Part shown: positions 24,103 through 42,860 of the stretch, in pieces
Position numbering within the stretch: position 1 is the stretch's first letter
Layout: each line of letters starts with the position of its first letter
From: Selaginella moellendorffii
Taxonomy: Eukaryota > Plantae > Lycopodiophyta
Assembly: GCF_000143415.4 (NCBI RefSeq)
Contig: NW_003314310.1
Coordinates: 1-64,000, forward strand
DNA: 64,000 nt
Direction of reading: 5' to 3'
Notes under the pieces: generated by a model
Told to the model about the DNA's origin: nothing
Database searches by the model: none
The model's input: only the letters and a program-made list of their open reading frames with translations
Made by a program: the position numbers and the translations under genes

Positions 24103-26883
24103 CAAAGAGGGTTTAGGTTCCGCTTCGTGGTGTTATCCTATGGTAAACCACCATAGGATAAAGGGTCAAAACCACGTGCACTACATTTGGTATCAGAGGA
24201 TGATCTCAGCGAGTACTATACAATGAGATTGGGCAACTAGTCTCGTTGCATACGCAGAGATGAAAACGATGATCCGAGTGGGTACACATTTGGTGCAAAA
24301 GGCTTTGCAATCGTTCCTTGGGTATGGATCTTGGTTACCTTATTGTACTTTATGATGTGAGCTTGAGCTTGGGCTCACAAGAGGGATTGAGTTGTTCCAT
24401 TCGCACGAGTTTGAGCTTGGGCTCATGAGTGAGGCACATTAGCAACTCGAGGATACACTTTGAGTTGGCAGGATTAATGTTAGCCTATCGGTCGTTCCAT
24501 GGGTTGTTCCAATGGTTCCATGAGTTGTTCCATGTACCATGGGTAAAAGCAAACCTTCCATGAGTTTGCTATGAGTGGCAAATAGGCTGGTCTGTAGCTA
24601 TTTAGCATAGCACTAGTGGATCCTTCCTAGGCATGATTATAAGTGGATCAATCAAGACTATAGGGATTAGTCTATTGATTCAAGTAGTCATTGCCGTGCT
24701 CTCTCATAAACTTTTCTTGGATTGGACTGAAGGCAGTGCGAACGCAAGCTCGAAGTGTAGTCAAAGATGAGACCGAAAAGAGAGTCGTCGGGGATGAAGG
24801 ATCAAACACGTAAATCATCTTCTCTTCTTGGAGAGATGATTTGCAACGAGGTGTGACTCATTGCTCGTGTTCACATCATGCAATCAAGAGTCCCTACCTT
24901 GATGCATGTTGGAGATGATGGTCTTACAAATGGTGAGTTGTGGGATGGATAGCGGTGAAACGATATACCATTTTGTCTAGGCTTGCTATGGAAGACTGGG
25001 GTTGCAATGCTCAATTCTTTTCAGAGGAACCTTGTTATTGGTCCTTGAGTAGCTTGGTGTTGGATTAGTGTTGAGTTTGGTCGAAAAGAGAGGCATGAGT
25101 TTGTCCATGTTGTGAACAAAAATTAGTGGTGCTGAGTGTTGTAAATCTTTATCGGTGGAGTGTGGCATTTATGTTGCATTTTGTCGAATCGAGTTTGCAC
25201 TTGATACTCACATAAACCTTTGAAGTAATGACATAGACATCGCTCGTGGTATTGCTCAATTGATGATCAAATCATTGCGATTTCCATATCATATCCATGT
25301 GATAATGAGCAATGTGTTTACGAAGTTGCTTGGTTAAACGATGATCAACCCCAAAGTGGTTGATAGTGAAGCTAGTCTACTTACACGTAGTAGCATTATA
25401 GTAGCTTTGACTAGATTCTTAATGGTGGTCCATTGTGCTAAGCTTAAGTTGGTACCTTGTTTCCTTGAGGGTTTGCCCATTAGGTGTTGGAAAGGGTTAT
25501 AGCAATCATTTGCTTTAACTTGTTGATTGTTCCGTTAGCACTTGGAGTAGATTATTGGATGGAGAAGGTGTGCAGTTGAGGCATTGACAATCATTAGCAC
25601 TTGTGTTAGTGGAGATGACATTGTTATGTTGAGTGATAAGGAATTTTCCTTAGAGCTTGATTTTCCATGTCATTTTTCTTGTTAGTGTTTTAGCTTCACA
25701 TTGGATCTTGAAGGTGGTTGAAGAAGAGTGTTAGTGCAATGTGAATATCCAAAGATGTGGTCTTCGTGATCAAGCTTTAGATGTTCATTTTGCATTTTGC
25801 AAATGTCGGAGTTGGATGTCGAAAGTATGGGCAAAAAGATGTTCGAGGCTTAAGCATACTATGGGTCGTGAGAATTTGTGTTGAGGTGAACCTATGTGAA
25901 GTTGTTAGTAAGAAGAAGTTGGTTGAGTCTTGAAAGTTTGTATTCCTGGACTGAGAGTCATTCTTTCTCTAGGATGGAAAATTTTTCCACAAATTTTCTT
26001 AGACTTTTCTAAAGGCTAATCTGTTGATCACTTTGTCCGAAAACCATTCCGTTTTCGAAAGTGAATACAAACTAGTGAAGGGGTTGGAGTTGACTTCGGT
26101 TAGCTTAGACCTTAGTAAGTAGTCTGTATGATGCAACCCGGAAGGGATGCTGACTTTTGGGGCTAAGACAATTGAGTTGGATAGAGTCTGAAGTTAGTGT
26201 AGAAAAGTGGCCATTGCACTTTTAAGCTCTATTTCGTTAAAGTGGGATTTATTCAGTAAAATGGGACTAGGTACAAATTTTCAAGTATTTGAAAATGACG
26301 TGAAATTATATGTTTTTTGTCCAGGGGCTAGACATATCTGGGGCATGGTGACTAGCGCGGTGACCTTATGTCCAGACTGAGTCCATCTAGTTGTATAATA
26401 AATCTCATTGTCAAGGTGAACAAGCCGAATCTGAAGCTAAAGAAGAGCGATGGCATGCGCGCACACACTATTTGTTTGTTCATTGAGCGTGTGGTGAGCT
26501 TTCCAAGATGAACATCATTCCTATTAGCCAGACATATCACTTAATGGTGAGAACATTTAGATATTATTCAATGTTATCTTTTTCTAACGAATCTAATTGT
26601 GAAGGTGTAGCAAGAGGCATTGCTAGTCTGGAGAAGTCATTTAACTCATTTGACCCTTAGTGTATTTTCATGAAACTAAATAACATTCATATTATTAAGG
26701 AATTTCTCTAGTACCTTTTTTTTACGACATAGAGGCTTGCATTTCTTTCAAAGGTGATTTAGTAAAAGGCCTGAGGGCACATGCCATTCTATTTCTCAGA
26801 CCGGTATTAAGATATACTAGTGCAAAGGGAAAAAGGTATTTGGTGATCAAGTAAATGGCATGAGGGCACACGCCATTATAAGC

Positions 26884-27141
26884 CTAAGCGCTAGTGGACA
26901 CCTCCTTTTTGGTACTCTCAGCGGTACTATCATCCTTCTCCGGGTCAGTTATTTTGCTTTGGATTGTTGTCTCTGACGTTACTGGGGCGTTCTCGATAGT
27001 TGTTAATGTTGCCGTTTGTTCATAAAAATGATCACCTAGAGTATAGTACGGGGAGTTTGGAAGACTTATATATTCTACATCTTCACCTATCTCCTTCTCC
27101 GTCTCCTTTTCTGCCTCACTTACAGATTTTGTGCTTGCCAT
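26884..27141 (-). CDS. Possible small acidic, S/T-rich protein or exon inside the transposon (MASTKSVSEAEKETEK..., 85 aa)
   Basis: ATG-initiated open frame with protein-like composition downstream of the transposase; no recognisable domain. Confidence 0.3.
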   Translation of the reverse strand: MASTKSVSEAEKETEKEIGEDVEYISLPNSPYYTLGDHFYEQTATLTTIENAPVTSETTIQSKITDPEKDDSTAESTKKEVSTSA

Positions 27142-27429
27142 GAGAACGCTCTTCACCCTAAAATATGGAGTTTGTTGTGTTATAAAAGGAAACCAACACA
27201 CACGCTGCAAGGGAATGATGGTACATAAAGCACGTAAGCCCACAATATGGGTTTATGTGCCATTAATATGGGCCACACGCCATATTATTAGATTTATGCA
27301 CGTGTGATTGGTAAATGCATATGTCACATCATCTTTGTTTTACCTCACACACTATATCAAGCCTCCTCTGATTCAGATTCGGATTGTTCACCTTGAAATA
27401 AAATACATTAGAAACTTTGTAAAGGAATA

Positions 27430-30400
27430 TTAATGAATCTCACCTTGAACCCGAGTTATGAATGCTCTTGCTGCATCTCTTGCATGGTCTGGCAAGGTGA
27501 TGGTGGCACTCTGCTTCCGCATCCAACCATGCACAACATTATCCACCGATATGCTCATGCTGGGATCCCTTGGATTCAGCACCCATCTCTTTTCTAGGCA
27601 ATCCTTCGTATATCCGGAACTTGGCTTGAACCACTCCACAGTTACATTGAAGGAGTTAGTTTCCGCGTCCTCCTCTGCATCAGTGATGCAGCGCCCCACC
27701 CATATCATTTGTTTTTTATTACTGGGTCTGACAAGCACGACCATTCCTTTGCAGACCTGTACTGGATTGAATGCTGAATCCGGCTTCTTGTTCCTCGGCC
27801 CACAATAGTGATCCTCAACATTGTTATCTGTCACTGCATTTCCAGAGGACATTGTTCCGCTACTATCTGGTGCTCTGGGTTCTGGCCAAAAGGACTCTTC
27901 CAATTCTTCATATACAACCGGCCCATTTTGGATAGCAGATATAATCTTCTCCCAGTATTCGAGCAAAGGCTTGCACCTCTGAAAATAGGATTCTCCACCA
28001 AACACCAACCCCCTCTTCCAGAAGGCAATATGCTGTCTAATCCCGGCCACTATACTTTCCTGGTCTTTGAGTCCATCCGGGTGCATCGGCCGTGGGGAAC
28101 CCTGAGGAATCATAGGTTCCCCAGTTATGGGATCTCTCTTGAAGAGTTCAATGCCGTCCACTGGCAGCCACACTGTGTCCCATTCTCTCATCTTGTACCT
28201 CATCACTGGAGCACCGTCACACATGCTGAAATGAAACTGAAGAGGCTTGGAGTGGCCAATCAGCGTTTCGGATCCATCCCTGATGTAGCCTCTTACAAAC
28301 CCCTTAAAGTCTGGAACCTCTGTCAGAAGTGCAGCTTCAACAGTGCCTTTGATGCAATTTTGGAATTCATCGTAGAGTTGTGGGAGGGTGAGGACATTGG
28401 ATCGCCGGAGGGACTCTGCCAGGTGACTGAACATGGCATCGACGTCTTCATGAGTGTGCCCAACCATGAGAAAGCCAAGTGTAACCGTTTCAAATATGCC
28501 TTTGGCAACAAGCATCGCCAAGTACGCGAAGACGTACATGTTTTTGTTCTCACTGCCAGCATTGTCTGTTTGGAGCAGAAGATGGGGTGGAAGGCCACAT
28601 CGGCCGCAAGAACTTCCTTGAGATTCTGCTTCGTTTGGATGAGGCTGTGCATTCACCGGGCGACCAGCCTCGTCGGAATGGCATGAGGCCTCACGTGATA
28701 ACCCTACAATCTGACGGCCAACATATTCACTGGGATGGCATGGGGCCCCACGCGATACTGCAAGCCTTTGCTCCTCCTCCAGCTGAACCCTGTATGGGGT
28801 TCGATCGACAAGGGCCTTATGCAAGGGTTGGCTGTTCAGCTCAGTCTGCGCACTTTGCAGAGACCTTAAGTGTTTTGCTAGGGACGCAATCATCATGTTT
28901 GCACCCCCGCCACCCCATAGAGGTACAAAGAAGTTCCCATAGTTCTGGGCACCATGCCCATGAGCGATTATGCCAAACAGAGACACAGGCAGCTGCATGG
29001 ATGAAGAGATTGCCTTGGGGGCAGGATTGAGTCGAGGTAAGCACGTCTTTTTCTGGTCCATTTTGTCGTGGATGATGCAGAGGTAAGAGTCAGGTCTCTC
29101 CATGGAGAGAATCCTGTTATGATAATATGCAGTCCTGCAGCTTCTCTGCTCGATGTTGTGGTCGAGCCGCCTTCTAACCAACGTCTCTCGCTCTTGAGCG
29201 CTGCAAGAATTCTTCGACAAAGCCATTTTGATAGCAGTGCACTCGTCACACTTTGAAAAGCTGGAGTACTTTCCTATACTCACATCCCTGAACCTATTGC
29301 TCCACAATCTACTAAATCTAGATTGGCTCAGCTTCCTGTAGCCATTACTCTGGAGTTCCCGATTCACATCTTCCAATATGGCCCCCTTGGTATACATGGA
29401 AGGGAGAACTCGTTGGGTGTCTCGTGTTCCATCTTCCAAGAGGCGGGTTTTATGTGGTTGCTGCTTGCTACATGTCTCGACAAACCTCTTGAAGATTGCC
29501 TCTCCATATACAACATGACCCCTGGTTTTGTGCGTACCGTCGTTCCCATGGACTGCCTGTTGAACCCTTTGTTCCTCGAACTCAGTTTTGATTCTGTAGA
29601 ATGTGGTTCGAGGGACTCCATAAATGATTCTCCATGCCTTCATGCAGACCAAACCCCTCTGGAAGACCATGCCCCCCACCTGATGTTCTGAAGCATCAAC
29701 AGATGACCGTAATGCCTCATACACAAAATTGCGAGCTGCCTTCCAGGACAATGTCTTGTATCTTGCTCTCTCCTCTTCAATAGCATCCCAATCAGCATGT
29801 TGACAGCACCTCCTCTTGCAACAAGCAACTGTCGAGACCATTCGAACCTCCATCGCCATTTTCTGCCTTTTCGGTTCGTTGCTCAGATCCCTTTGGCTGC
29901 GCTTTAGGAAGGTGTACTTTCTTTTCCCATGAAGAGATGTTCTGTCATCAGTTGTAGTGGTGTTTGATTGTGAATCCTTCACATTCTCAAACACTAAGTG
30001 CCTCAATTTCCACCACACAATGCTTCCAATAGTCAGACTGTTTTCTTCTGTGTCAACAACCTCTAAAATCGCAACTCCAATATCATCCCAGCCCAATTCT
30101 TGATTAGCAACCGCATCTCTTGGATCGACAACTGTGGCTAAGCCCTCAGCTACCACCTCCCCCTCGGGGTTGTTTAGAAACACTTTTGCCTGAATCCATG
30201 TAGCACGGTTCTTAAGATCCACGGAGGGAACATGCGTCGCACTTGCGCTGTCCCCAACATTTGCTTTCTTCTGAAGATTTTTCAAGGCAACAACAACATT
30301 TACCCCGACGACCATCTCTCCTCGTTCAATAGCGACCACATTCCCATCGAAGACAGTCTCTACTGATACAGCAGCATTGCCTTCCCCAAGCCTTTCACAG

Positions 30401-30498
30401 TGTATAACAAAGTTCCGATCCATAGACACAAGGGTCCCTTTTGCAACTCTCTTCCCACCATTCAAAATGTAAACCTTTTCCCCAACCCTGAAGGCCAT
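27430..30498 (-). CDS. Sola-like DDD transposase, 1022 aa, intact ORF
   Basis: Catalytic-type motifs IIHDKMDQ, LQTDNAGSENKN and FLMVGHTHEDVDAMF; cysteine motifs CCKRRC and KCDEC; two N-terminal TNP1/En-Spm-like beta repeats (VAKG/VAEG..LG..V); a splice acceptor TTTCAG just before the ATG implies a 5'-UTR intron. Confidence 0.88.
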   Translation of the reverse strand: MAFRVGEKVYILNGGKRVAKGTLVSMDRNFVIHCERLGEGNAAVSVETVFDGNVVAIERGEMVVGVNVVVALKNLQKKANVGDSASATHVPSVDLKNRATWIQAKVFLNNPEGEVVAEGLATVVDPRDAVANQELGWDDIGVAILEVVDTEENSLTIGSIVWWKLRHLVFENVKDSQSNTTTTDDRTSLHGKRKYTFLKRSQRDLSNEPKRQKMAMEVRMVSTVACCKRRCCQHADWDAIEEERARYKTLSWKAARNFVYEALRSSVDASEHQVGGMVFQRGLVCMKAWRIIYGVPRTTFYRIKTEFEEQRVQQAVHGNDGTHKTRGHVVYGEAIFKRFVETCSKQQPHKTRLLEDGTRDTQRVLPSMYTKGAILEDVNRELQSNGYRKLSQSRFSRLWSNRFRDVSIGKYSSFSKCDECTAIKMALSKNSCSAQERETLVRRRLDHNIEQRSCRTAYYHNRILSMERPDSYLCIIHDKMDQKKTCLPRLNPAPKAISSSMQLPVSLFGIIAHGHGAQNYGNFFVPLWGGGGANMMIASLAKHLRSLQSAQTELNSQPLHKALVDRTPYRVQLEEEQRLAVSRGAPCHPSEYVGRQIVGLSREASCHSDEAGRPVNAQPHPNEAESQGSSCGRCGLPPHLLLQTDNAGSENKNMYVFAYLAMLVAKGIFETVTLGFLMVGHTHEDVDAMFSHLAESLRRSNVLTLPQLYDEFQNCIKGTVEAALLTEVPDFKGFVRGYIRDGSETLIGHSKPLQFHFSMCDGAPVMRYKMREWDTVWLPVDGIELFKRDPITGEPMIPQGSPRPMHPDGLKDQESIVAGIRQHIAFWKRGLVFGGESYFQRCKPLLEYWEKIISAIQNGPVVYEELEESFWPEPRAPDSSGTMSSGNAVTDNNVEDHYCGPRNKKPDSAFNPVQVCKGMVVLVRPSNKKQMIWVGRCITDAEEDAETNSFNVTVEWFKPSSGYTKDCLEKRWVLNPRDPSMSISVDNVVHGWMRKQSATITLPDHARDAARAFITRVQGEIH

Positions 30499-31768
30499 TC
30501 TGAAAGTGCAGAAAAGAAGTTAAGACCATACAAAAAATGATTGGAGAATGGCCTAAATCATAACATACCAAACAACCTCAATAGCATGAGGCCACATGCC
30601 ATTATTCAAACATGCTATTGACACCCACGTGAAATTTCGCATTCACAAAATTGGCATGAGGCCTCATGCCATCTTGATATACACACAGCTGCAGGCAAGT
30701 AAAAACATACATGACAATACGCTAGCCATGAAATTGCAAGGGCCCAAGATGGCATGTGGCCTCATGCCATTTCTAAATGTGGTCCTAAGCCATTCCATGG
30801 TGAACATACCAGGAAGCACAAGTGCCGAATATCAAGAGGAAGCGGTAGCCACACCAAAGACAGTGCCGCTCGCAACACCGCAACTCGCATAAACTGCTGC
30901 TCGCAATGGCGCTCGCAATGCCGCAACCGCTCGTAGACGCATAAACCACAGCCCACAACGCCGCTTACACAAGCAGCGCTCACTGCGCTCAGCGGAACCA
31001 AGAACACGGCGCACAAAAATGATAGACCTAGGAATGAGTTCGATAATTCAAAAATAACACACGCTTGAACGTCACATCAAATCCTCTGACAAACCAGATC
31101 TTATGATTCCTCTGACAAATTTCAAACTGAGTAGCTTCTAGACTTTGCTGTCGGAGGTTGAACTTTGTCACATCATGTCCTTGCCTCGATCCAGCTGTGC
31201 CATGTCAGTGATTCGAACTTTGCCATGCCATGTCAGCGATCCGCGCCAAGATTATTCGCCGTGTAAAGGAATAATTACGCTGTGTGTGTACGTCCATTTA
31301 TGGCAATATAAGGCCACACGCCATTCAAAGAATAATGCTTGACATAAGGCCACACGCCATTCAAAGAATAATGTTAGTTGAGCATGTTTTGGTGCATTTT
31401 TGGGTTCAAAATTGCATGAGCCCACACGCTATAAAGTTTACCTGTACCAAAAATAGAAACAGCTTTATTTACTTGGGAATTTAAGTGGTTGAGGCATTTT
31501 TAAACTTACAAACACATGCCCTACTTACATTCCTTTGGTTGCCTAAAATTCAAAAATATTATAAACCTTTCTTTTTGCATTTTCAATGTTTTCAATTATG
31601 GTTTTTGATTTTCGTAGGACCAGCCTAGTAATCTATTTGCATCCCATCATGTTTATAGCTAGCTTTCGTTCGTCCCCTTCGCTAGCCTGAGATACATCTG
31701 CTCGGCATCTGCCTCTTACAGCATTTGCCCAGAAAGGGCATCTTTCTTCACGCAGCATTTGCCACATG

Positions 31769-31801
31769 TTTAGGGTTTAGGGTTTAGCGTTTAGGGTTTA
31801 G
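31769..31801 (+). repeat. Short interstitial plant telomere-type repeat (TTTAGGG)n / telo-box
   Basis: TTTAGGGTTTAGGGTTTAGCGTTTAGGGTTTAG. Confidence 0.8.
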
Positions 31802-33384
31802 CAATTCAGTAGCTTGATAAACATGCAAATACAGAACTTGATGCAAAATCCTTTGATATGTCACAATGCCCCTAGGACCATAAACACATTTCAATAGAGA
31901 GGGTCCTTTCATTTCATAACTCCTTACGTAGATCTTGGTGAAACCAGAGTTAGTGAAGTTAGTTTCTTGTGATCCCGCATCTGATTGTGATGTCCCTTTG
32001 CAGTTTCGATGGAAAGGTCAATGCACACCAAACTGTAAAATCTTGGAGCAAAATAACGGTCGGATCTATGGCAAATGCCCCTGAAACATTGTAAGGCTCA
32101 TGTGGTCTCATGTGGTGTCCGATCGAGATGCTTCTTTGCAGGGTCATCAAGAAAGACATTGTATACCATTCTGTAAAATATAGTTGCGATCTAACGGTTG
32201 GATCTCCAGAAAACTCAAAAAAATCTCGCGCGTGTCAGAATATCCTAGGAATATACTCCTATGTGCCCCTGAAAATGGCATGCGGCCCCACGCCATTCAA
32301 GAGATAATGCCAGATGACGCCGAGAATTTTTTGGTGCATTTTTTGGGTTCAAAATTGCATGAGCCCACACGCTATAAAGTTTATCTTTGCCAAATAGAGA
32401 AAAGTTTATCTGTGTCATGTGAGGTAGTTACAGTCCTTTGTGCTCGGCATCTGCCTCTTGCAGCATTTGCACTGAAAGGGAATTTTTCTCCATTCAGCAT
32501 TTGGCCCTGAAAATGGCATGCGCCCACACGCCATTCAAGGAATAACGCCACAGGACCCCTGGATTTTTGGGTTTAAAATGTTTAGGGTTTTTTGGGTTTT
32601 TTCAAAATATTTTGGGTCCAACGTTTTTTGGGTTTCTTTGGTTCAAAATTGCATGAGCCCACACGCTATAATATTGATTTGAGAGAAAAATAGAAACAGA
32701 TAGAATTTCTTTATTTAGCTGAACATCTGCCATTTTTGGAAATACAAGATGCTTTGGAATATCCAATCATGCATGGTATAAATATAGCGAGGGTATTAAA
32801 TGATATCCCAATCATGATCTTTCTTTTGGATTTCGCGTGCATGCAGTCCGAGGAATGATGACGTTGCGGATTTCTTTTGGATTTTGCGTGCTTGCATGCG
32901 CGCGGCAATCCAGAAATTAATGGTGGCGCCCAAGTCCGAGGAATGATGACGTGGCGGGATTACCAACCGTTGTGAAATTTCGCGCGTGTGAGGTTAGGTT
33001 TTGCATTTTGCTTTGTACTCGCGCTCGCGCTCGCATCACACTCGCGCTCCCGCTCGCATCGCGCTCCCACTCGCGATCACGCTCACTTCTCTACAGGTTT
33101 CTCGTGTGCATCGGCGTCCACTCGCGCTTGCATCACACTCGCGCTCGCATCGCGCTCGTGTGCATCGGCGTCCACTTCAAGACACACCCAGTTTGTAACT
33201 TCGCCGCCAACTCCGCCGCCCACTCCACCACCCACACGCAGCCCACTTGGCGTCCCGGGAGATTTCAGCACCACTCTCCAACTGTAAGTGGCAGAGTAGC
33301 CTTGCTGCTACGATCCGCTGCACACACAGTGCACATTCGCCAGCGAGTCCGGCCTCGATTGTCACGGCCTCCATTCGGCTTCAA

Positions 33385-36300
33385 ATGGTAAGTCTTTTAG
33401 ACCAAGTAGAAAATGGCATGAGGCCACATGCCATTCAGTAGCAACATTGGCATGCACCGATTGGGCTCTCGAGTGCAGTCCGGTTACAGATGGCGTGTAG
33501 CCTCACGCCATCTTAGGATGCAGCCTCAAGACATCTGATGCAGTGGTGAATGGCGTGTGGCCTCACGTTATTTCCAGCTGCTAGCTTTTCATCTGTCAGC
33601 TCTAATTGTTGTGCATTTTTGAACAGGCGAGGAATTGCGTTCTTCTTCCAGCCACTGTCAATGTGGATGCAGAGAAGGGGGAGGAGCTCACCAGTTGGAC
33701 TTTCGGGATGGAAGGCGAGGATCTGATGCTGTACAACACAGATGGTGGGAGAAAAGAATGCATGGGGATCCTCATCCAAGTGACAGACACTCCATGCAGT
33801 TCCATGCAAGAATATGGACTGGCACTTGTGGTATAGACAGCGTCCGCCTTCAAGATCCACCTTGCACATCCTAGCGGCTTCCCGGAGGGGGGCAGCGGCT
33901 ATGAGGAATTCCTAGAGGGAGCTAGGGAGAGGTTGTCCAGGAGGCCCACAATTTCAAAGATGCTGCGGGTCTATGAAGATCACATGGAATCCACGGACCT
34001 CACCTACGGCGATGTTCAAAAACTATATTCCAACATTGAGCCATTGAGAGTGCCTCCAGTTTGCGAAGCGAAGGGGAAGGGGGTCGATCTGGAAACTACC
34101 CCGAAGCAGAAAAGGGTGGTCAAGCTCAAGCCGACGTCCGACTCTGCTGCTCCAAAAAAGAAGCTACTCGGTGATGCCATTGCCTCGGGTTCGAACACTA
34201 CACCCACCAAAAAGAAGAGCCGCAAAGAGCAGAAAGAGCAAGAAGAGGCAGCAAAAATTGTCGCAGATAATAGTACTTGTTACTATTCCAACAAAGTATA
34301 TACAATCGACGTGAGCCGTATCGAGATCCAAAGCAAATACAACCACAGGCTAGTATCTGATGAGTGGGTGGAGAAACTGAAGCAGAAGATGCTGGCAAGT
34401 CCAGTAACACCCGACATCGCAGACGTGATCCCCTACTACCGAACAATGAAGGGCGAGACGAGGTTTCCAGACTTGATCAATAGGAAGGTGTTGGACGATC
34501 AGAACATCCGGTTCTATGCCGTCTCCGGGCAGCATTCTAGCTTGGCGATGCAACAGATAGTTGTGGATATTATGGTGGGCGAGGAGGTGAAGAAAGTCTT
34601 CAAGACAAGAGTTGTCCGCCTGATAAAAGGCAACTCGCCCCTCCGATCTATCATATACATCTCCCACGCGCAGAATGTCAAGCAAGAAACGTGCTACAAA
34701 TCGGGTCTGCACGAGACATTGGCACGAACACGGAAGCTCTGGGTTCAACTGAAGAAGCCACAAAAACCAGGACAAGGACGTGCACTAGCAACTAGCGCCT
34801 GGTAGGTAAGCCTCGTTGCATGTGGCATAGCATGTGGCCTCACGCCATTTCCATTGCAGGAATTCTCGAGTCTTCTCTCGAAAACACTGGGGGTCAATGA
34901 CACACTCAGCATCCATAACATTCTACTCGCGATAAAAGTTGTTTTTGACAAATGGGTAGATGTGCTGAGGAGGTACCATGACGGGGAGTTGCTAAACTCA
35001 ATGGGTGTGGAGGACGGCCGGAAGCCCAATGATTTGAAGCTCAACGGCTTGCGTTTCTCGCGGTCTCTAGACGACGACGACCTTCTGACAGTGGCTAATG
35101 CTCTTCTACGTGGTGAGGTAGTCTTCAACAAGACCAAAATGACTCCCGACCATATTGTGACATACGAGGACTTGTGCACGACTCTGAGAGCTCGTGCGCT
35201 ATTGAAGGATTGGATCTTCGAGCAAGTGGCCGTGGCGAGGGTGAGCATCGACACCACGCAAGAGATGATGGAAGAGCTGGACTTGTCAAATGAAGACATC
35301 GACGAGTACGTGAAGGGGGCCCCCAAGTTCATCGATCTGCTGCGGGATGCCACGAAAAGTAAAGCTGAGAAGTTGGATCAGTATCCAAATTTCATTAAGA
35401 GGGATGTCGACCGCCGGCTTCAGAAACAGCTCGACCCCGCAGCAGAGGCCTATCGAGAACCTTACCGGGTATACGTGAATTCGGATGAGGATCAAAGGTG
35501 GAGGAGCATCGTTTCCCGCGGAGATGAGCAGGTCAAGAACATCTTTTGTGTGATGGACTTCACAAACGAGGAGATCACTCATGCAGACGAAGTCAGCTCC
35601 ATCATTGACTTAATGGTGGGACTTGCGGAGGTGGAATCTTCAGTCCACTATATGATCTACGACTCCGAATCCTATCACAAGTTCTGGAAGGCCTTGAACG
35701 AGGTGAAGGCTCGGTTGAAAGGCAAGGAGATGCGGGAGATCCATGGGATAATGGCTAAGAAGAAGATACCGACGAATGTCCGCATCTTCACAGTTGCCCT
35801 TGTTATTGGTCCTGCAGCAGAGTGGGACTGGAGTGACTTCCCAGCTTCGTTCAACAAAGCCGATCGAATTGATCTGAGGGAGGTCAATTTACCCGTGCCT
35901 GAGGAACTGAAGACGGCTATGGAGCTTTCGAATCCAAAGAAAGCTCCAGGTGCAGCATGGGAAATGCTCAGCTGGGTCTTCAACGCAATAGCGGGTGACT
36001 CCAAGGGCAAATGCGTTGTCGAGTACAACTGCGGCGGACTATTCTTTCGAGCCGCACTACTCAAGGGTGTCCCGTGTGTTGCGGTGACAAACTCCATTGA
36101 AGAGGTGACTTCAATGGAGCATATAATTACAGTTGCCAAAGAAAAACAGTATCTTCTCTACGAACCTGGTGAGTACGCACTTTAAGTTTAAATGTTATCT
36201 CACAAGCTCTGTATGCAGGAGCGTGGCCACCCCCAGATGCTGAAACGGCGTTAACAGCTACTGATGTTAGGCCGAGGTCACAACCTGCACAAGGTAAGGT

Positions 36301-38732
36301 CACGTGAGGCCTCACGCCATTTTGATTATAGATCGTTGTGAATATTCAGACACGAGGACTGAAAAGCGCACTGGTGGCGCGTCGAAGAAGGACAAACAGA
36401 CAAGCAATAGGAAAAAAGGAGGTACAAATTATATTTGCAATGGCGTGTGGTCTCATGCCATTCCTTGCAGGAGACACTTCTTCAAAGGCAAAACAGGCAA
36501 GCACCAGCCAAGCTCAAACTGACAGTGGTCATAAAAAGCGAAAGCACGTTGGACAGTCGTCGGGATCAGAGGCGTTTGATTCAAAAAGGAAGAAGGGCAA
36601 CGAAAAGATGATAGGTAATGCCTCGCGGTTATGGCGTGTGTGCTCATGCCATTCATTGCAGATCAAGGGCTGAGTGAAAGGAGCCAGTCACCACCTTCTG
36701 ACTCAGATTCCTATGGCGGACTCCCCTTCCCCAATCTCAATGGAGAGGTACAATGGATGAGGGATGCTTTTCAAGTCAGGGCCACGTTTTTCTCATCTCG
36801 TCGTCTTCGAAGGGTGCAAGAACGTGCAGAAACCATGTTAAGACAGTCGGGTGAGGATACGGTCCTAGGTCACGCACTAAAACAGGCTATGGATGTCTTG
36901 TATTTTGAGATGGAGACTCGGCCAGATGATTTTTCCAAGATGGTCCTGGAAAAACAAGCAATCCAGCCTGAGCAGCCTATGGAAGAAATGCAAGAGGGGG
37001 ATGAGGAGCCAGAGAAAGATAATGAGCAGGAAGAGCAGAAGGACGAAGAGGAGGACAAAGAAGAGGAGGACGAAGAAGAGGAGGACGAAGAGGACTTGGA
37101 TGGTCCTCACAATGGTGACGATCACAATAACGACGATGACGATGATGACGATGATGGCCAGCCTGAGGTGGCCAAAGAGCAGCGGAGGAAGGTCATACAA
37201 GACAAACCATCAGGTAAATAATAGTACATCCATTCCTAACCTTTTACCATTTCTAACATTGTCCATGTAGGTCGCAGAAGAAATGGTAAGTAGAGATTAT
37301 TCAGTTGAATTAAGATACAAACTCTAGCCTTTAGTGTCGAGGAAGGATAGTGCCAAGCAAGGGTCGAAACGTATGTCCAATCCTTCAGAATCAGCAGTGC
37401 GCCCAAGTGATATCGGTCCTAGTTCCTCAATAGCAGTTGATGGTAAATACAGTATAGTCGATTCAATGTGCTAATGAGTTTGTTTTTAGTAGCACGGGAG
37501 GATACCATCTTAATCGAAGGGAGATATTTGGACATGCATATGGATCCGCCAGTGGACTCTACTTGCCTGCAAGAGTCATCAGAGCTGGTGGAGGCTACTA
37601 TCCATATCAACGCCAAGCAAGCTGACCACGCTCCACTTGATGCTGCTCATACCACTAAGTCAATCTTGTCCACGTATCCAACTGACGGTGACCAGGCGCC
37701 ATTGGACCCGCATGAGGCCGCCCCAGCCGCCGAGCCGGTCGTATCCTCATTTCCAACGTGTGCCCAATCGTCTGACTATGCGCCGTTGGAACCTCCCTAC
37801 ACCGCCCCTGCTGCCTGTTCGGTCATGTCCACTTTGCCAACGGAGGCACCAGCTGAAATGGCGTGTGATCACACGCCATCGGAACCACCCCATGCCACTG
37901 TTGAGCCAGTTGTACCAGAGTCTACAGCTGAAATGGCATGTGCCCACACGCCATCGGATGCGATTGACCCCACATTGCAGAGGAGAGTATTTCCGCCCTT
38001 CACGTTTCCTCGACCAAAACCCTCTGAACGACCATCGGGAGCACCATTCGCTAATATTGTAGATGGTAAAATTGACTTGTACCATTTTTTATGCTGACAC
38101 ATTTCATTTCAGAGTCACGGCGAAAGTACTGTATCGTTTTTGATCTGAACGGTGTCCTTTTCTCCCATGAGCGTGGCTCGTCCTCGAATGTCACTGCACC
38201 CTCCAAAGCCTGCGGTCGCAAGTTGGTCAAAAGAGACAGATTCACATTAATCACACGGGAGAAACTGCGGGATCTAATAATGACCATGCGACACTTAAAA
38301 CAGAGGGCCGGGTTCAATTTGCAATTGGGAGTTTGGACATCCATGATGCGCCACAATGCATTAACGTTGCTACAGATGATGCACGATCAGACGCGAGTAA
38401 TATTACCATTTGACTTTCTCCTAACGCAGGAGGATTGCTTGACTATGGTCCATGTGAGGGGTAGCAAGCCCATCTTCGTCAAGGCAGAGGCTGTAGTGAT
38501 GAACCGGACTGCTAGGTCAAGTGAAATCCTCATCATCGATGACTCGCCGATTAAAACTGCAGCGAACACGCACACATATGCAGTGCACCCCATCTCNNNN
38601 NNNNNNNNNNNNNNNNNNNNNNNNNNNNNNNNNNNNNNNNNNNNNNNNNNNNNNNNNNNNNNNNNNNNNNNNNNNNNNNNNNNNNNNNNNNNNNNNCGTA
38701 TTAGAGAAGAGATGGCATTACTATTGGGTTAA
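33385..38732 (+). CDS. Transposon cargo gene, about 11 exons and roughly 1500 aa: ParB/Srx-like domain, degenerate DNA-methyltransferase-like fold, basic/acidic disordered linker, FCP1/NIF-type HAD phosphatase; 1-2 in-frame TAG codons (possibly pseudogenised); 3' end crosses an N gap
   Basis: Exons joined in frame by GT-AG introns: 33385-33387, 33627-34805, 34860-36168, 36219-36293, 36350-36421, 36471-36614, 36662-37213, 37271-37285, 37335-37442, 37490-38065 and 38113-end (last eight introns all phase 1, 47-57 nt). Motifs: NHRLVSDEWVEKLKQKM..FYAVSGQHSSLA; KCVVEYNCGG..RAALLKGVPCVAV; IVFDLNGVL..GVWTSMMRHN..ILIIDDSPIK. Confidence 0.75.
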
Positions 38733-41700
38733 ATCCTGATAGTGTGGAGAGTGATGAAATTCCAAGATTATTGTATAGGCGTTGGAGGCAAAAAATAACA
38801 GTCTGAGATGGCATGTATTTATTTAAAAATGTAACTTATTATGGCATGGGGTTCCATGCCATTGTATTAATATTAAAAGACAATTCTTTGAGAGGATTTG
38901 CATTATACTAGAAGTGTTACAGCATGTTATTGGAAGTCTACGAAGTTGTTTTATTAATAAGGGGAAAGTAAAGATTGAATGGGGACTTGGGCTCCACCTA
39001 GACTCGGAGCAACTGAGCCAATATTAAAAGGATGGAAAGAAATTGGACGACGATGACAAGGAGAAGAGAGAGGTGAAGCAGTGAGAAGTGATTGAGTAGA
39101 CATTTCCTTGTTTAAAATAAAATGGCATGTGCCTCAATGCAGTTGAATTTTGTTATATTTATATACTATATAAAGGTTTGGAAACCTTATTTTACAAGTG
39201 GGATAATGACAATTCCCACTTTAACGAAATAGAGCTTTTTTCTAGAAAGGTGACCCTTGTGCCTTTCTTTTATAGTGTTCTACTTGGTGGCAGGTTGCAC
39301 CTTGCATTTCACTAAGACTCTATGAGAGTAGTGAGCTCTCACTGATCTTGACTTGGTCTTGGTGGCTCTGCGCCTTGGCTAAGGATGGTGATGTCCAACT
39401 TAGTTGTTTGAAGTTGAGATGTTAGTACCCGTACTATAGCTTTGTCTATGAGGAAGTTGTGTACTGATATGAGTTCATCTCATGGTCTTCACTTTAGTTT
39501 CGACTGAGTGTTGATCATGTATAACTAGCCTCTTCTAAGGCATGCTCAGAGCTGTTGGCTAAATGCATTGGTGAGCTTATTGCGGTTGAGTTGGAGTCGA
39601 GTAGTCATTTAGTTTGTGTTTGTCCATGAACCTTTATCTCGACCTGGGGTATCACATTCATGTTGGACAAGTATATAACTCGATAGCATGAGTTTAGTGT
39701 TTGGGTCTTGTGGAGACAAGTTGAAGAGTGGTTGTTAGTTGCTTTGCGACTAGTGATTGCTTGTAGATTTCGTCGAGGACTATTGACACTTACTTCGTTA
39801 TGCTTAGCTTTTGGATTGATGCAGACATGCTCTTCATTAGCTTTGGCATTATGAAGTTTAACTTATGGATGTGTTGAAGCGGATGTTGTGGGTTACACCA
39901 TGATTTCTTCTTTAGCATTGAAATTAGTTCATGCGAGACTTGTGATCATTATTAGGCAAGACTTAGCTATAGACTTCTTTGAGCTTTTGGTTCTTTGAGT
40001 TTTATACTCATTGTTCCATTTGGTAGAAGTTGTTGGGGAAGGCATTTTTGCTCATTAGCTTCAATGTTGAAGTTAGTATTTGCATCTGGCAATCATTGGT
40101 AATGATTGACTGTCATCTAGGATAGTTGATTATCCTTGTCAAAGATGTTGCTTGGTTATTGTTGATATAGAATGGTTTGTCATTCTGCGGGATGGTGGAT
40201 TCCTTCTTTGACAATGATTATGCATCTCTTTATTGATGGGATGGTTGATGATCTTTCATGATAGTTAGTTGTTCTCCTTGATGGCTTATGGCTTTTCGCA
40301 ATACCGCATGTTCTTTGTGGTTTGCTCTGGATTGGTCTGTTGGGTTTGAGACATCAAAAGGATGTTGCTGACACTTGCTTAAGCAACTCTGGTTCCTTGG
40401 TATTGTTGACCGGGATCTATTCGGATTGGCTCGTGTGATAGTTGGCATGAATGAGTATTTGTTGGCCATGCAACATTCATTCTATTGTGTTGATTATTGC
40501 TTGAGTTCGCTTTGATAGATTCGGATGTATTTCCTTCGGGTGATACATTCGTGAGCATTTTGCTTGTCAGTCAATGATACTTTGTGTTTTTTTTTTGAGT
40601 TATCTTTCGTAAGTTGTTTGGCATTCTGTCTGCAATCTTTAATAGTTAAACTTTATCATTGAGTTTACTTGATGATATACTTGCTATTGAATTTTGTCTA
40701 TTCTATCTAAACCTTACCGACGGGTTTGGTTTCTTTGCTCAGGAGGGTTGGGGCCTCCGGCTTCTCTCTCTATGTCTCTGCGGGCAGGGCATATCACACT
40801 TTTGTAAGCTGGGTGACACCTAGAGCAGCAAGGGTGGCTAACTCCGTTGGTCATTTCCTTGTCGGCGACGGCCGGAAGGTGTCTGAGCTGGTAGCGCATC
40901 CGCGTTAGACAAAGAGGTTGCCTCCTAACTCATTTAAGTTGGTGCATTTCTCATATAGTGTGAATACCGTGAACTTTTTCTGGAGTTGTTTCCTTGGCGG
41001 TATTCTAGACTCGAGTATGCATCGACGAGGACGTCGATCTTCCCTAGGGGGGGAGAGTGTCGTGAATGTGACTTCGGGTATCGAAAGTTACCTGTCGGCT
41101 AGTCCTTACGGACACTCTTACCTTACTGCCACGATGGCAGGAGGTCGGTATTGCTGGACCCGTTATCAGTTTCCCACTTGAGCTAGTTGAGAAACTGGTC
41201 AATGACCATGAACTTAGATTGGATAAACATAAGGTAGGAACCCTATGTGTTTCTTGCTGAGCATACTTGGCCTGGTTTGAGAAACTTGAGTCATTGGCTT
41301 GCACTTGCTAATATCAAGAACCCCCGCGATATTGAGCTTGGTCCCTCAATATCGCTAGATGATAGCTTACCGTGTCTGCCAAACACCCTCGCTATCATGC
41401 CCTTTGTGTTAGTCTCATTTTGGTCCCAAATGCTATTTATGGAAAGTGTCCAGATTTGCTCATTTGGCATATCTATGGAATGTAGAGATCGTCTTGAACA
41501 CAATGGTGTTCGTCTCATGTCCAAATTCGCAATTTAGGGACATTCCATATTTAGTAAGTTTCGAGCTTGTCCCAGAGACTAACTCCTGATATTAAGGGTG
41601 AAAGCCCAAAGCGTGTGTTCCTCAAGGGGGGGGGGGGCTATGGGGGGTTCCAAATGTATAGTAGGGATAGTGGGTAGGTTGGGCATGGCCGACCAACCTG

Positions 41701-42210
41701 AGGCATAGTCTAGCTCCCGCTTGCGTGCCTGTCCTTGTTCTGTGTCCGGCTTGGGTCTAAGCCCAAGTTCCATTCCATGCTAGTTGGTGGAGTACCCATG
41801 TCCTCGCGTTAGGCCACCGGTATGCCGAAATAGCGCCAGACTCCATTTGGCTCCGTTTTGCATGCTGGTCCTGGCATTGGGATGCTAGTTGCTCCAGGAC
41901 TGTTCCAAGTCGCTCCGGGCTCCTGTCCTTTCGTTCCTTGGGCTGTATGCTTGGGAGTTGCTCCGTGGCTCGATTCCGTCACTCCTTGGCTTCGTGCTTG
42001 GGAGTTTGCAACCGTTCCTTTGTTCAGTGGCCCAAGGCCCTGAACCTCGGGTTCCTATGGACACATGGCATGGACACGTGGCATGTGACACGTGGCATCT
42101 GTCACGTGGCACAAAGAGGGTTTAGGTTCCGCTTCGTGGTGTTATCCTATGGTAAATCACTATAGGATAAAGGGTCAAAACCACGTGCGCTACATTTGGT
42201 ATCAGAGGAG

Positions 42211-42860
42211 TGTAGCGCATGTGATCATGGGATGAGATTTGGATATACTGTCACCGTGGATCCTTGGAACCTTGGGGGATAAATGGGGATAAAATAGCCA
42301 TTAAGGGCTCTCTCATCAAGCAATTGCCCCTTTTCCAGTTGGCTTAAGGGGAAAGAGATAAGGTGCACTACAGTTGGTATCGGAGCAAATGGCACGGGTT
42401 CGATTCCCATTGATTAGTGGCTACTTAAAAAGTATAATATACCCTTGAGCAAGGTATATTCCTACCCCTAAATTTGAAATCGTATGTATTGGACATCCAT
42501 GCGTACGTCCTTCCTCTTGTGTGGAGTATCCACGGACGAAGGTATCCACCGTGGTACGGGTGGATGACTAGTTGCCTCACATGGAATAGCTGGTCTACAC
42601 AATGGAAGGATTGGTAGATTGAGTGCGGAAATGGAGATGCTGGTTCCCCTTGGCTCAGTAGGGGTTGTTAGTCTACACAATGGAAGGATTGGTAGATTGA
42701 GGCTGGTTCCCCTTGGCTCAGTAGGGGTTGTTAGTTAATAGTCAATGAGGACATTGACATCTCTGAAGGGGGGGTGAGTGTAGTGGGGGATAAATGGGGA
42801 TAAAATAGCCACTAAGGGCTCTCTCATCAAGCAATTGCCCCTTTTCCAGGACCACTTTGG
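42211..42860 (+). mobile_element. TRIM (terminal-repeat retrotransposon in miniature) with deleted 3' LTR
   Basis: 162-bp 5' LTR at 42211-42372 (TGTAGCGCA..TGCACTACA), PBS TGGTATCGGAGC just after it, PPT GAAGGGGGGGTGAG ending at 42778, second LTR from 42779 sharing a ~64-bp block with the first. Confidence 0.8.

What the first reader, a model, noticed from the sequence alone, without database searches (positions are those of the whole stretch)
26224..39237. Candidate new system: 13-kb Sola-like transposon pairing a ParB/MTase-like/phosphatase cargo gene with its own array of palindromic sites
Seen: perfect TIRs, a TSD, an intact transposase, a divergent spliced cargo gene, and ~26 copies of one 20-bp palindrome that start and stop with the element. 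Established: Arabidopsis VANDAL (Mutator) elements encode VANC anti-silencing proteins that bind short motifs accumulated in the element's own non-coding DNA, and bacterial ParB dimers load on palindromic parS sites. Inference: this could be an independent protein-plus-cognate-site module that marks the element's own copies, for example for anti-silencing, chromatin or Pol II control, or synapsis of distant ends. I know of no description of this in Sola-type elements but could not search.
Basis: partly seen in the sequence, partly recalled or inferred. Interest (0 to 1): 0.92.

Follow-up and report, generated by a model that had tools for sequence, protein, structure and literature searches.

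The report
Transposon studded with its own palindromes
A young 13-kb cut-and-paste transposon carries 25 copies of one 22-bp palindrome found nowhere else in the window, but related transposons without the extra "cargo" gene have their own palindrome arrays, so the sites most likely belong to the transposase and not to the cargo.

Summary
The structural observation holds. Window 26224-39237 is one discrete insertion with 27-nt TIRs (26/27). A paralogous empty site at 18599-18602 proves the 4-bp TTTT duplication. The element has an open 1022-aa DDE transposase (Pfam DUF7869) and a divergent multi-exon cargo gene. It holds 25 copies of ATGGCRTG-N6-CAYGCCAT, against 0 in the other 50.9 kb (0.8 expected).

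Of the cargo labels, only the NIF/HAD phosphatase-like domain is supported, and its catalytic motif reads DLNGV. No library search supported ParB or methyltransferase. Part of the cargo is collinear with a Selaginella host gene, including one intron position. At that position exon 1 ends in TAG where Selaginella has CAG. The assembly gap hides the end of the phosphatase domain.

No cargo homologue occurs in 80 loci encoding relatives of the transposase. At least 12 of these loci carry their own arrays of different 16-24-bp palindromes next to the transposase gene. These palindromes follow the transposase tree.

The palindromes are therefore most likely the cognate sites of the transposase, in the manner of Spm TnpA, VANC or AtMu1. 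The new features are that they are palindromic, spread over the whole element and sit inside mini-introns. I rate this a new variant of a known kind, of moderate to high interest.

The parts
26220..26223 (.). Left copy of the 4-bp target-site duplication, TTTT
   Evidence: The paralogous empty site has a single TTTT.
26224..26250 (+). Left terminal inverted repeat (AAGCTCTATTTCGTTAAAGTGGGATTT)
   Evidence: pair I2: 27 nt, 96% complementary, first 24 nt perfect. The same end occurs in a second copy, L003, with a different flank.
26450..26876 (.). Left subterminal group of 3 palindrome copies (starts 26450, 26766, 26855)
27430..30498 (-). Transposase gene: open 1022-aa ORF, DDE (D478, D645, E684), Pfam DUF7869. 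CCx3CC and further conserved Cys/His lie in the N-terminal half.
   Evidence: AlphaFold model with 23 sequences, mean pLDDT 67.9.
28678..28756 (.). Two palindrome copies (28678, 28735), in frame inside the variable linker between catalytic D478 and D645. The linker (aa 577-633) is predicted disordered.
30499..33932 (.). Divergent intergenic region between the transposase and the cargo. It holds 12 palindrome copies (30581, 30651, 30749, 31339, 31411, 32275, 32354, 32513, 32648, 33413, 33490, 33550), often in pairs or triplets 57-98 bp apart.
33960..34805 (+). Cargo exon 1, taken from the first ATG: a basic N-terminus plus a domain of unknown fold. It ends in an in-frame TAG (34803-34805).
   Evidence: The last 26 residues are collinear with the N-terminus of the Selaginella LOC9650508 protein.
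34806..34859 (+). Cargo intron 1 (GTAAGC...TTGCAG), containing a palindrome at 34827-34848. Its position, directly before GAATTC, is the same as in the Selaginella homologue, whose intron has no palindrome.
34860..36168 (+). Cargo exon 2. It is collinear at both ends with the 451-aa uncharacterised Selaginella moellendorffii protein LOC9650508.
36169..36661 (+). Three small exons (36219-36293, 36332-36421, 36471-36614) and four phase-1 mini-introns of 50, 38, 49 and 47 nt. Three of the introns consist largely of a palindrome (36299, 36440, 36631) followed by a YAG acceptor: TTGCAG in two of them, TTATAG in the 36294-36331 intron.
36662..38065 (+). Cargo exons 36662-37213, 37271-37285 and 37490-38065: acidic and Pro/Ala/Thr-rich low-complexity sequence. 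Two palindrome copies (37858, 37933) are read in frame as a repeated peptide.
38113..38596 (+). Last cargo exon up to the gap: NIF/FCP1-like HAD phosphatase domain. The catalytic DxDx(T/V) position reads DLNGV.
   Evidence: PF03031, E 1.9e-6, profile positions 1-125 of 160. (HAD-IIIC, E 0.006, below cut-off). Motif read.
38597..38696 (.). Assembly gap (100 N, length only estimated) inside the NIF-like exon. It hides roughly the last 35 profile positions.
38697..38739 (+). Sequence after the gap. All three frames stop within 13 codons, so the cargo coding sequence ends here.
38841..39143 (.). Right subterminal palindrome copies (38841, 39122)
39211..39237 (-). Right terminal inverted repeat
   Evidence: pair I2
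39238..39241 (.). Right copy of the TSD, TTTT
18599..18602 (-). Paralogous empty site. The two flanks of the element are contiguous here around a single TTTT.

Best explanation
The element is a young, probably autonomous cut-and-paste DNA transposon of the DUF7869 DDE-transposase group. It may be Sola-type, but that could not be tested.

The 22-bp palindromes are most likely the cognate binding sites of the element's own transposase. The transposase would bind as a dimer through its fast-evolving N-terminal part.

Sites near both ends would serve end recognition and synapsis. The larger number upstream of the transposase gene, in the divergent promoter region and in introns, would let the transposase, or an N-terminal isoform of it, act on its own copies. 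That action could be transcriptional activation or anti-silencing, or autoregulation.

The cargo is a later acquisition. It is a chimeric gene, partly captured from a host gene with its intron, fused to a NIF-type phosphatase-like domain. The palindromes then colonised its introns. The cargo is not the partner of the sites.

Shown: the anatomy, the insertion, the element-specific enrichment, the superfamily-wide arrays, the co-variation with the transposase and the absence of the cargo from relatives.

Inferred: that the transposase is the binder, and what binding does.
For: 1. Arrays of family-specific palindromes next to the transposase gene are a recurrent trait of relatives at 26-43% identity.
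   - L001/L002: TATCGTCG-N3-CGACGATA, 18 and 10 copies.
   - L005: TTGGCCATATGGCCAA, 6 copies against 0.01 expected.
   - L018: CGTCGGC-N5-GCCGACG, on both sides of the gene and in one of its introns.
   - L023/L024: CCTCTCGGCCGAGAGG.
   - L025: 12 copies. L026: 5 copies.
   - L030: 10 copies, on both sides of the gene.
   - L031: 8 copies.
   - L048: 12 copies against 0.00 expected.
   - L006/L007 and L013 also carry arrays.
2. Motifs follow the transposase tree. Sister loci share a motif (L001/L002/L016, L006/L007, L023/L024, L030/L043). No motif recurs in any non-sister locus.
3. L023/L024, L025 and L026 have nearly identical catalytic cores. Their palindromes differ by symmetric changes in both arms. 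The N-terminal residues 90-210 are 78-91% identical within the same-motif pair, but only 41-85% identical between motif classes.
4. None of the 80 loci (910 kb) has a cargo homologue. L023 looks like a complete 7.1-kb element whose only long ORF is the transposase.
5. In the window, 5 copies are subterminal and 12 lie upstream of the transposase. This matches the position of the arrays in relatives.
6. The homologous Selaginella intron lacks the palindrome, so the sites entered the cargo after capture.
7. Precedents exist for transposon proteins acting through own-site arrays:
   - VANC21 binds motifs in non-coding VANDAL21 DNA that form variable tandem repeats (PMC5735166).
   - AtMu1c transposase alone binds its own elements, hypomethylates them and activates them (bioRxiv 10.64898/2026.08.24.746577, section 7).
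   - The titles and abstracts listed concern piggyBac, piggyBat and Hermes transposases and their transposon ends (PMC7351741, PMC11707139, PMC10368747). Only the Hermes abstract describes binding of the left end through several BED domains; none of the three was opened.
Against: - No binding data exist.
- The TIR sequence is unrelated to the palindrome.
- In the one relative with recognisable ends (L023) the array is internal and upstream of the gene, not subterminal. A purely transpositional role is therefore unlikely.
- Most relatives are short metagenome contigs, so 'cargo-less' is firm only for a few.
- The co-variation rests on few independent contrasts, and sister loci share ancestry.
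- The DNA-binding domain of this transposase is not identified. Foldseek gave only weak hits (E at least 0.01), to BAH and KOW/Tudor-like barrels.
- A host factor, or a DNA or RNA hairpin function, is not excluded.
Confidence: 0.5

Rival explanations
1. The cargo protein binds the palindromes through a ParB-like N-terminal half and marks the element's own copies. The MTase-like and phosphatase parts then act on chromatin or on Pol II.
For: The cargo is nuclear-looking, with basic NLS-like stretches in exon 1 and in the small exons. It ends in a NIF/FCP1-type domain, and that family includes Pol II CTD phosphatases. The palindromes are dense in and around the cargo gene. Exon 1 residues 1-258 remain of unknown fold, so a DNA-binding domain there cannot be excluded.
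Against: - No ParB or MTase signal in Pfam, NCBIfam, PADLOC or PDB.
- The Gly-rich 'motif I' lies about 45 residues before the C-terminus of the homologous Selaginella protein and is followed here by low-complexity sequence.
- The catalytic motif of the NIF domain reads DLNGV.
- Exon 1 ends in TAG.
- The cargo is absent from all 80 relatives, while palindrome arrays are present in many.
- The cargo has no close relative in the protein collections.
Confidence: 0.08
2. No element-encoded binder is involved. The palindromes are cis-elements read by host factors (promoter or enhancer sites, insulators), or they act as DNA cruciforms or RNA hairpins. As hairpins they could be a source or sink of small RNAs, or fold transcripts.
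For: - Arrays sit mainly upstream of the transposase gene, that is in promoter or 5' UTR territory.
- Between closely related families, changes are symmetric in both arms, as expected if pairing potential is what is kept.
- Copies lie in introns and are therefore transcribed.
Against: Each lineage uses an unrelated palindrome that tracks the transposase tree. Under this model every lineage would have to recruit a different host factor. Symmetric changes are equally expected for a homodimeric protein. Rfam finds no known RNA family in the window. Stems of 8-11 bp are short for stable structures.
Confidence: 0.2
3. The palindromes have no function. They are a short repeat unit that spread inside the element by local duplication, slippage or gene conversion, and are tolerated wherever the sequence is non-coding.
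For: Several copies lie in larger duplicated blocks: D2-D6, and the 113-229-bp tandem periods in L001. The CpG positions of the motif are decaying: CATG 17 against CGTG 6 in the left half.
Against: - The same architecture arose with different sequences in at least 12 related lineages.
- The motif is kept while the flanks diverge beyond blastn detection, as between L001 and L002.
- Copies occur singly in four separate cargo introns that are not duplicates of each other beyond the motif and acceptor.
Confidence: 0.1
4. The palindrome is an intron-forming module. The unit plus its 3' acceptor creates or maintains spliceable mini-introns, in the manner of introners, and the intergenic copies are its reservoir.
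For: Four cargo introns of 38-58 nt are essentially donor + palindrome + YAG acceptor (TTGCAG in three, TTATAG in one). The right arm contains a CTCAY branch-point-like sequence. Two of the units are 90% identical over 31 nt including the acceptor. L018 has its own palindrome in a transposase intron.
Against: Intron 1 is ancestral, with the same position in Selaginella and no palindrome there. Four other cargo introns lack the motif. Most copies (19 of 25) are not in recognisable introns. In relatives the arrays are tandem and upstream of the gene.
Confidence: 0.05

Closest known systems
VANDAL21/VANC anti-silencing system of Arabidopsis (Mutator-like elements)
   Same: Short family-specific motifs accumulate in the element's own non-coding DNA, often as tandem or clustered repeats. 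They differ between related families (PMC5735166, PMC10398659). The window element and its relatives show the same pattern.
   Different: This is a different transposase superfamily (DUF7869 DDE, 4-bp TSD). No VANC-like accessory protein was detected. The motifs here are 16-24-bp palindromes, not short asymmetric motifs. Copies sit inside mini-introns. Binding and hypomethylation are untested.
Transposase or TnpA acting as a sequence-specific regulator of its own copies (En/Spm TnpA, AtMu1c transposase)
   Same: An element-encoded DNA-binding protein recognises repeated sites within its own family and activates or hypomethylates them (bioRxiv 10.64898/2026.08.24.746577). In most relatives here the transposase is the only recognisable gene.
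   Different: In AtMu1 the sites are at the TIRs. From my own knowledge, in Spm they are subterminal 12-bp motifs. Here the sites are palindromic and lie mostly internal or upstream of the gene, and in the window they spread over all 13 kb. No experiment exists for this group.
Multiple subterminal transposase-binding repeats (Hermes BED sites, piggyBac 19-bp palindromic repeat bound by dimerised CRDs, piggyBat)
   Same: Several binding sites per end, sometimes palindromic and bound by a dimeric domain. Extra sites can restrict activity. Those details are from my own knowledge; I saw only the titles and abstracts of PMC10368747, PMC7351741 and PMC11707139. The window has 3 + 2 subterminal copies.
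   Different: Those sites are few and confined to the ends. Here 20 of 25 copies are internal, and in L023 the whole array is about 2 kb from the nearest end.
Sola superfamily of DNA transposons (Sola1-3)
   Same: A large DDE transposase, TIRs and a 4-bp TSD. That Sola makes 4-bp TSDs is my recollection of Bao et al. 2009, which was not readable here. Sola elements are reported in ferns (PMC6786969, PMC6890710).
   Different: Homology to Sola1, Sola2 or Sola3 transposases could not be tested. The only library hit is Pfam DUF7869.
Gene capture by DNA transposons (Pack-MULE or CACTA-type transduplication, cargo-carrying transposons)
   Same: The end of exon 1 plus exon 2 is collinear with a host-context Selaginella gene, including an identical intron position. 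It is fused to an unrelated phosphatase-like domain.
   Different: The captured gene keeps a 1081-codon open frame over eight exons and has acquired the element's palindromes in its introns. The direction of transfer, capture against domestication in Selaginella, is not proven.
Bacterial ParB-parS
   Same: Only the formal resemblance of clustered palindromic sites.
   Different: No ParB N-terminal or HTH domain was detected in any protein of the element.

Membership tests
Sola superfamily | Transposase detectably homologous to Sola1, Sola2 or Sola3 transposases (PSI-BLAST or HMM convergence) | not testable with these tools
   No Sola reference sequences or profiles are available. Pfam gives only DUF7869. 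The defining papers are not held.
Sola superfamily | 4-bp target-site duplication and terminal inverted repeats | tested here: met
   The TTTT TSD is proven by the empty-site paralogue. The TIRs are 27 nt. That 4 bp is the Sola rule is from memory.
DDE cut-and-paste transposase (RNase H-like) | Conserved D, D, E triad in a conserved core | tested here: met
   D478, D645 and E684 are invariant in 23 sequences. The model of the core has pLDDT 70-90.
VANC-type anti-silencing module | Element-encoded accessory protein of the VANC family | tested here: not met
   No Pfam family other than NIF was found on any cargo piece. The cargo is absent from relatives. No direct comparison with a VANC sequence was made.
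VANC-type anti-silencing module | Family-specific motifs accumulated in the element's non-coding DNA, varying between related families | tested here: met
VANC-type anti-silencing module | Protein binds the motifs and causes loss of DNA methylation | not testable with these tools
   Needs ChIP, EMSA and methylomes.
ParB/parS | ParB N-terminal (ParB/Srx) domain and HTH in the protein | tested here: not met
   Pfam, NCBIfam and PADLOC searches up to E 10, and PDB phmmer, gave nothing. The structure model failed with pLDDT 31.6, so a very remote fold match is not excluded.
SAM-dependent methyltransferase | Rossmann fold with motifs I-IV and beyond | tested here: not met
   No Pfam or NCBIfam hit. 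The Gly-rich stretch lies about 45 residues before the C-terminus of the homologous 451-aa Selaginella protein and is followed here by low-complexity exons.
FCP1/SCP (NIF) HAD phosphatases | NIF domain above the Pfam gathering score | tested here: met
   PF03031: 28.1 bits against 21.8, E 1.9e-6, profile positions 1-125 of 160.
FCP1/SCP (NIF) HAD phosphatases | Catalytic DxDx(T/V) motif | tested here: not met
   The sequence reads FDLNGV, so the second Asp is Asn. Its placement against the profile start is inferred and from knowledge of the family.
FCP1/SCP (NIF) HAD phosphatases | Complete domain | tested here: inconclusive
   The last roughly 35 profile positions fall in the N gap 38597-38696.
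Transposase-binding repeat sites | Repeated motif near both ends of the element | tested here: met
   Three copies lie within 653 bp of the left end and two within 397 bp of the right end. L030, L018 and L013 have copies on both sides of the gene.
Transposase-binding repeat sites | Motif co-varies with the transposase lineage | tested here: met
   Tree and cross-search. The N-terminal residues 90-210 track the motif class in L023-L026. The number of independent contrasts is small.
Transposase-binding repeat sites | Direct binding by the transposase | not testable with these tools
   Needs EMSA or DAP-seq.

The most novel reading that the evidence does not exclude
A whole, barely studied superfamily of eukaryotic DNA transposons (DUF7869 transposases) uses lineage-specific palindromes as an element-wide self-recognition code. 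The code would be read by a dimeric N-terminal domain of the transposase. It would be dense enough to be maintained even inside purpose-sized mini-introns of the element's genes, and it would serve to keep the element's own copies transcriptionally open. This would be a transposase-only counterpart of VANC. In this copy the code might additionally bring a captured Pol II CTD-phosphatase-like protein to the element.
Probability: 0.25. Interest if true: 0.8.

Novelty: new variant of a known kind. Interest (0 to 1): 0.6.

Why it matters
Sequence-specific self-recognition by transposon proteins (VANC, Spm TnpA, AtMu1 transposase) is so far documented in Mutator and CACTA elements of Arabidopsis and maize. 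The data here suggest that an unrelated and almost unstudied transposase group has the same logic in a recognisably different form. That form has three parts: long palindromes, arrays that turn over between sister families by symmetric changes, and colonisation of introns.

This gives a clean comparative system for asking how transposon proteins and their sites co-evolve. There are many lineages, each with its own site. It also gives candidate orthogonal pairs of DNA-binding domain and site.

For genome annotation, the result shows that DUF7869 proteins are transposases with a 4-bp TSD. It also shows that the cargo here is a captured and now interrupted chimeric gene, not a dedicated partner of the sites.

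Tried and rejected
- Searches for cargo homologues: none. The word-index search of exon 1 and exon 2 found nothing. The full HMMER scan of exon 2 gave only 5 weak hits. One of these was a spurious RTX-repeat protein. The real ones were an uncharacterised family including Selaginella LOC9650508.
- ParB and MTase tests: Pfam, NCBIfam, PADLOC and PDB searches up to E 10 were all negative.
- Single-sequence AlphaFold of exon 1: unusable, pLDDT 31.6. No fold search was run on it.
- Foldseek of the transposase model against the PDB: only weak BAH and KOW/Tudor-like hits. There was no transposase match, and it was no help for superfamily assignment.
- Viral-contig scan for relatives: none.
- Look-up of the 98%-identical UniParc protein P0013: not on record. 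One NCBI relative had no retrievable DNA.
- Contexts of exon-2 homologues (L085, L086): no transposase, no palindromes, no exon-1 homologue.
- Sola membership: the defining papers are not held and the held papers carry no usable signature.
- Rfam: nothing in the window.
- TIR and TSD search in relatives: convincing ends only in L023, without a clean TSD.
- L003 as a spliced transcript: rejected. Its 242-bp and 2-kb gaps relative to the window are not bounded by GT-AG. It carries the left TIR and a new flank, so it is a deleted genomic copy.
- Palindrome as a pair of fused TIRs: rejected, because it has no similarity to the TIR.
- Host organism: not identified. The only hints are the Selaginella homologue with a shared intron position and a plant-type telomere-like repeat.

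Full report
**The insertion**

Window 26224-39237 is bounded by 27-nt inverted repeats with one mismatch, the first 24 nt being perfect. Both flanks carry TTTT.

The decisive test was an internal one. The 524 bp left of the element and the 521 bp right of it both match, in reverse orientation, one continuous paralogous segment at 19120-18076. The identities are 90% and 87.5%. The two matches overlap by exactly four bases, 18599-18602, where the paralogue has a single TTTT.

This has three consequences:
- The element is a true insertion.
- It made a 4-bp target-site duplication.
- The DNA on both sides of the assembly gap (38597-38696) belongs to one and the same insertion.

The last point answers the continuity question at the level of the element. 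At the level of the reading frame the gap cannot be resolved (see the cargo section).

A second copy exists elsewhere. Logan contig L003 is 98% identical and has two internal deletions. It carries the same left TIR joined to a different flank, CTTT.

**The palindrome**

The unit is 22 bp, ATGGCRTG-N6-CAYGCCAT. The consensus is AATGGCATGnGGCCnCACGCCATT, and some copies are perfect 22-mers.

With up to three mismatches there are 25 hits, all between 26450 and 39143. There are none in the remaining 50.9 kb. Dinucleotide shuffles give 0.81 on average and at most 4.

The copies are distributed as follows:

| Location | Copies |
|---|---|
| Left subterminal | 3 |
| In frame in the variable linker of the transposase | 2 |
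| The 3.4-kb divergent intergenic region | 12 |
| Cargo introns | 4 |
| In frame in a low-complexity cargo exon | 2 |
| Right subterminal | 2 |

Introns are the densest compartment, with 4 copies in about 550 nt. The two CpG positions of the motif are often TpG or CpA: 17 against 6 in the left half and 8 against 15 in the right half. This is compatible with methylation-driven decay.

**The transposase**

The 1022-aa ORF on the minus strand (27430-30498) matches Pfam DUF7869 at E 5e-42. It has full-length relatives at 27-37% identity. D478, D645 and E684 are invariant in 23 sequences, as are several Cys/His clusters in the N-terminal half.

An AlphaFold model built on that alignment has a mean pLDDT of 67.9. 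The stretch that carries the two in-ORF palindromes (residues 577-633) is disordered. Foldseek against the PDB gave only weak matches (E at least 0.01), to BAH domains and to tandem KOW/Tudor-like barrels.

Whether DUF7869 is Sola could not be tested. The 4-bp TSD agrees with my recollection of Sola. Sola elements are reported from ferns.

**The cargo**

From 34860 to the gap, eight exons joined by seven GT-AG introns give 1081 codons without a stop. All seven introns are phase 1. The other two frames have 56 and 68 stops.

Only one domain label survives. The last exon matches the NIF/FCP1-type HAD phosphatase family: PF03031, E 1.9e-6, above the gathering score, profile positions 1-125 of 160. 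Where the catalytic DxDx(T/V) motif should be, the sequence reads DLNGV. The remaining profile positions fall into the gap. After the gap every frame stops within 13 codons.

Library searches gave no support for ParB or for a methyltransferase. The model of exon 1 was unusable.

The end of exon 1 and the whole of exon 2 are collinear with a 451-aa uncharacterised Selaginella moellendorffii protein, LOC9650508. That gene sits among ordinary host genes. The supposed methyltransferase 'motif I' lies about 45 residues before that protein's C-terminus.

The intron before the codons GAATTC is at the identical position in both genes. Selaginella reads TGG CAG followed by the donor. The window reads TGG TAG followed by GTAAGC. 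Exon 1 of the cargo therefore ends in an in-frame stop codon at a conserved position. No alternative canonical donor keeps both the frame and the conserved residues. Everything downstream is still open, so the interruption must be recent, or the downstream part is expressed separately.

The Selaginella intron has no palindrome and the window's intron does. The sites therefore entered the cargo after it was acquired.

**Relatives**

A scan of metagenome contigs with the transposase alignment returned 80 loci. Two more loci came from an ENA assembly. None of them contains a homologue of any cargo piece.

Many of them carry, next to the transposase gene, clustered copies of a palindrome of their own:

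| Locus | Palindrome or copy number |
|---|---|
| L001/L002 | TATCGTCG-N3-CGACGATA |
| L005 | TTGGCCATATGGCCAA |
| L006/L007 | GGCTCAAAC-N4-GTTTGAGCC |
| L013 | CCTATGGC-N6-GCCATAGG |
| L018 | CGTCGGC-N5-GCCGACG |
| L023/L024 | CCTCTCGGCCGAGAGG |
| L025 | TTCCAGTCGACCCACTGGAA (12 copies) |
| L026 | TCCACTCGACCGAGTGGA |
| L030/L043 | CACGGGTG-N2-CACCCGTG (10 copies, both sides of the gene) |
| L031 | 8 copies |
| L048 | TACGAACG-N2-CGTTCGTA (12 copies) |

Chance expectation is zero: 12 against 0.00 in L048 and 6 against 0.01 in L005.

Each motif recurs only in sister loci and follows the transposase tree.

L023/L024, L025 and L026 have almost identical catalytic cores. Their palindromes differ by three positions changed symmetrically in both arms. 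N-terminal residues 90-210 are much more conserved within the same-motif pair than between motif classes.

In L018 one copy sits in a 78-nt intron of the transposase gene.

L023 has recognisable long TIRs, about 1782-8904. Its only long ORF is the transposase. Its array lies internally, 0.5-1.5 kb upstream of that gene.

**Interpretation**

The palindrome arrays are a trait of the transposase lineage, not of the cargo. The most economical reading is that they are the binding sites of the transposase, bound as a dimer. They would have a role at the ends and, judging from position and number, a larger role in the control of the element's own transcription or chromatin state.

The precedents are VANC21 on VANDAL21 (PMC5735166, PMC10398659) and, more closely, the AtMu1c transposase. 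AtMu1c alone binds, hypomethylates and activates its own family (bioRxiv 10.64898/2026.08.24.746577). Multiple or palindromic transposase sites are known for Hermes and piggyBac (PMC10368747, PMC7351741).

What differs here is the palindromic form, the spread over the whole 13 kb, and the occupation of introns of 38-58 nt that consist of little more than donor, palindrome and acceptor.

I put 0.5 on the transposase as binder and 0.08 on the cargo. The rest goes to host-factor or structural roles, neutral spread, and an intron-forming role. None of this is shown experimentally.

**Verdict**

- The finding is best filed as a new variant of the known 'transposon protein with own-site arrays' theme, in an unstudied superfamily.
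- Interest is moderate to high (0.6).

Noticed in passing
window 15878-22550 versus 39343-43751: The element sits between two large inverted copies of other repeated DNA. There are many exact inverted matches of 10-60 nt (capped at 60 by the script), and 88-90% identity over the 0.5 kb next to the insertion. One arm provides the empty-site paralogue at 18599-18602.
   Followed up: partly
window 14603, 20728, 24056, 42065 (also 14519, 20644, 24135, 42144, 52884): A different multi-copy repeat carries ATGCCACGTGTCCATGCCAC and a second short palindrome. At least 4-5 copies lie in both orientations. It is unrelated to the element's motif.
   Followed up: no
window 31768-31801 and 32575-32600: A plant-type telomere-like repeat, (TTTAGGG)n with 4.9 copies, lies inside the element's intergenic region. 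A degenerate relative lies about 800 bp further on.
   Followed up: no
window 23672-23771: A second 100-N assembly gap lies outside the element.
   Followed up: no
window 36169-38112: All seven cargo introns downstream of exon 2 are phase 1. Every internal exon is therefore symmetric and could be skipped or shuffled without a frameshift. One intron is only 38 nt long.
   Followed up: partly
window 27430-30498 (-), residues about 1-170 and 915-1000: The transposase model has N-terminal tandem beta-barrels and a C-terminal barrel. Their best, though weak, PDB matches are histone-mark readers: the BAH domains of SHL, EBS and DNMT1, and tandem Tudor/KOW domains (E 0.01-0.1, rmsd 3.4-4 Å over 80-94 columns). 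This hints at chromatin reading by the transposase.
   Followed up: partly
window 28669-28788 (-): The two in-ORF palindromes in the transposase linker are each embedded in a GT...AG stretch, of 59 and 34 nt. Together these come to 93 nt, a multiple of three, so splicing both would keep the frame. Whether they are introns is unknown.
   Followed up: no
window 26411-26435 and 27372-27396: A 25-nt inverted repeat (96%) brackets the left subterminal palindromes and the region just past the transposase stop codon at 27430. It could be a nested small element or a structural feature.
   Followed up: no
L023 3797-4710, L025 1111-1621, L026 3-141: Sister families with about 85% identical transposase genes carry the palindromes TTCC-TCT-CGGCCG-AGA-GGAA, TTCC-AGT-CGACCC-ACT-GGAA and TTCC-ACT-CGACCG-AGT-GGA. 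The outer and central bases are kept and the inner triplet is changed on both arms.
   Followed up: partly
L085 3318-3941: A SET-domain ORF (PF00856, E 4e-5) lies 2 kb downstream of an exon-2 homologue on a Logan contig. Any connection is unknown.
   Followed up: no
L001 5994-6495: Long arrays of CTAATGT heptamers lie 2 kb upstream of the palindrome array in the relative L001.
   Followed up: no
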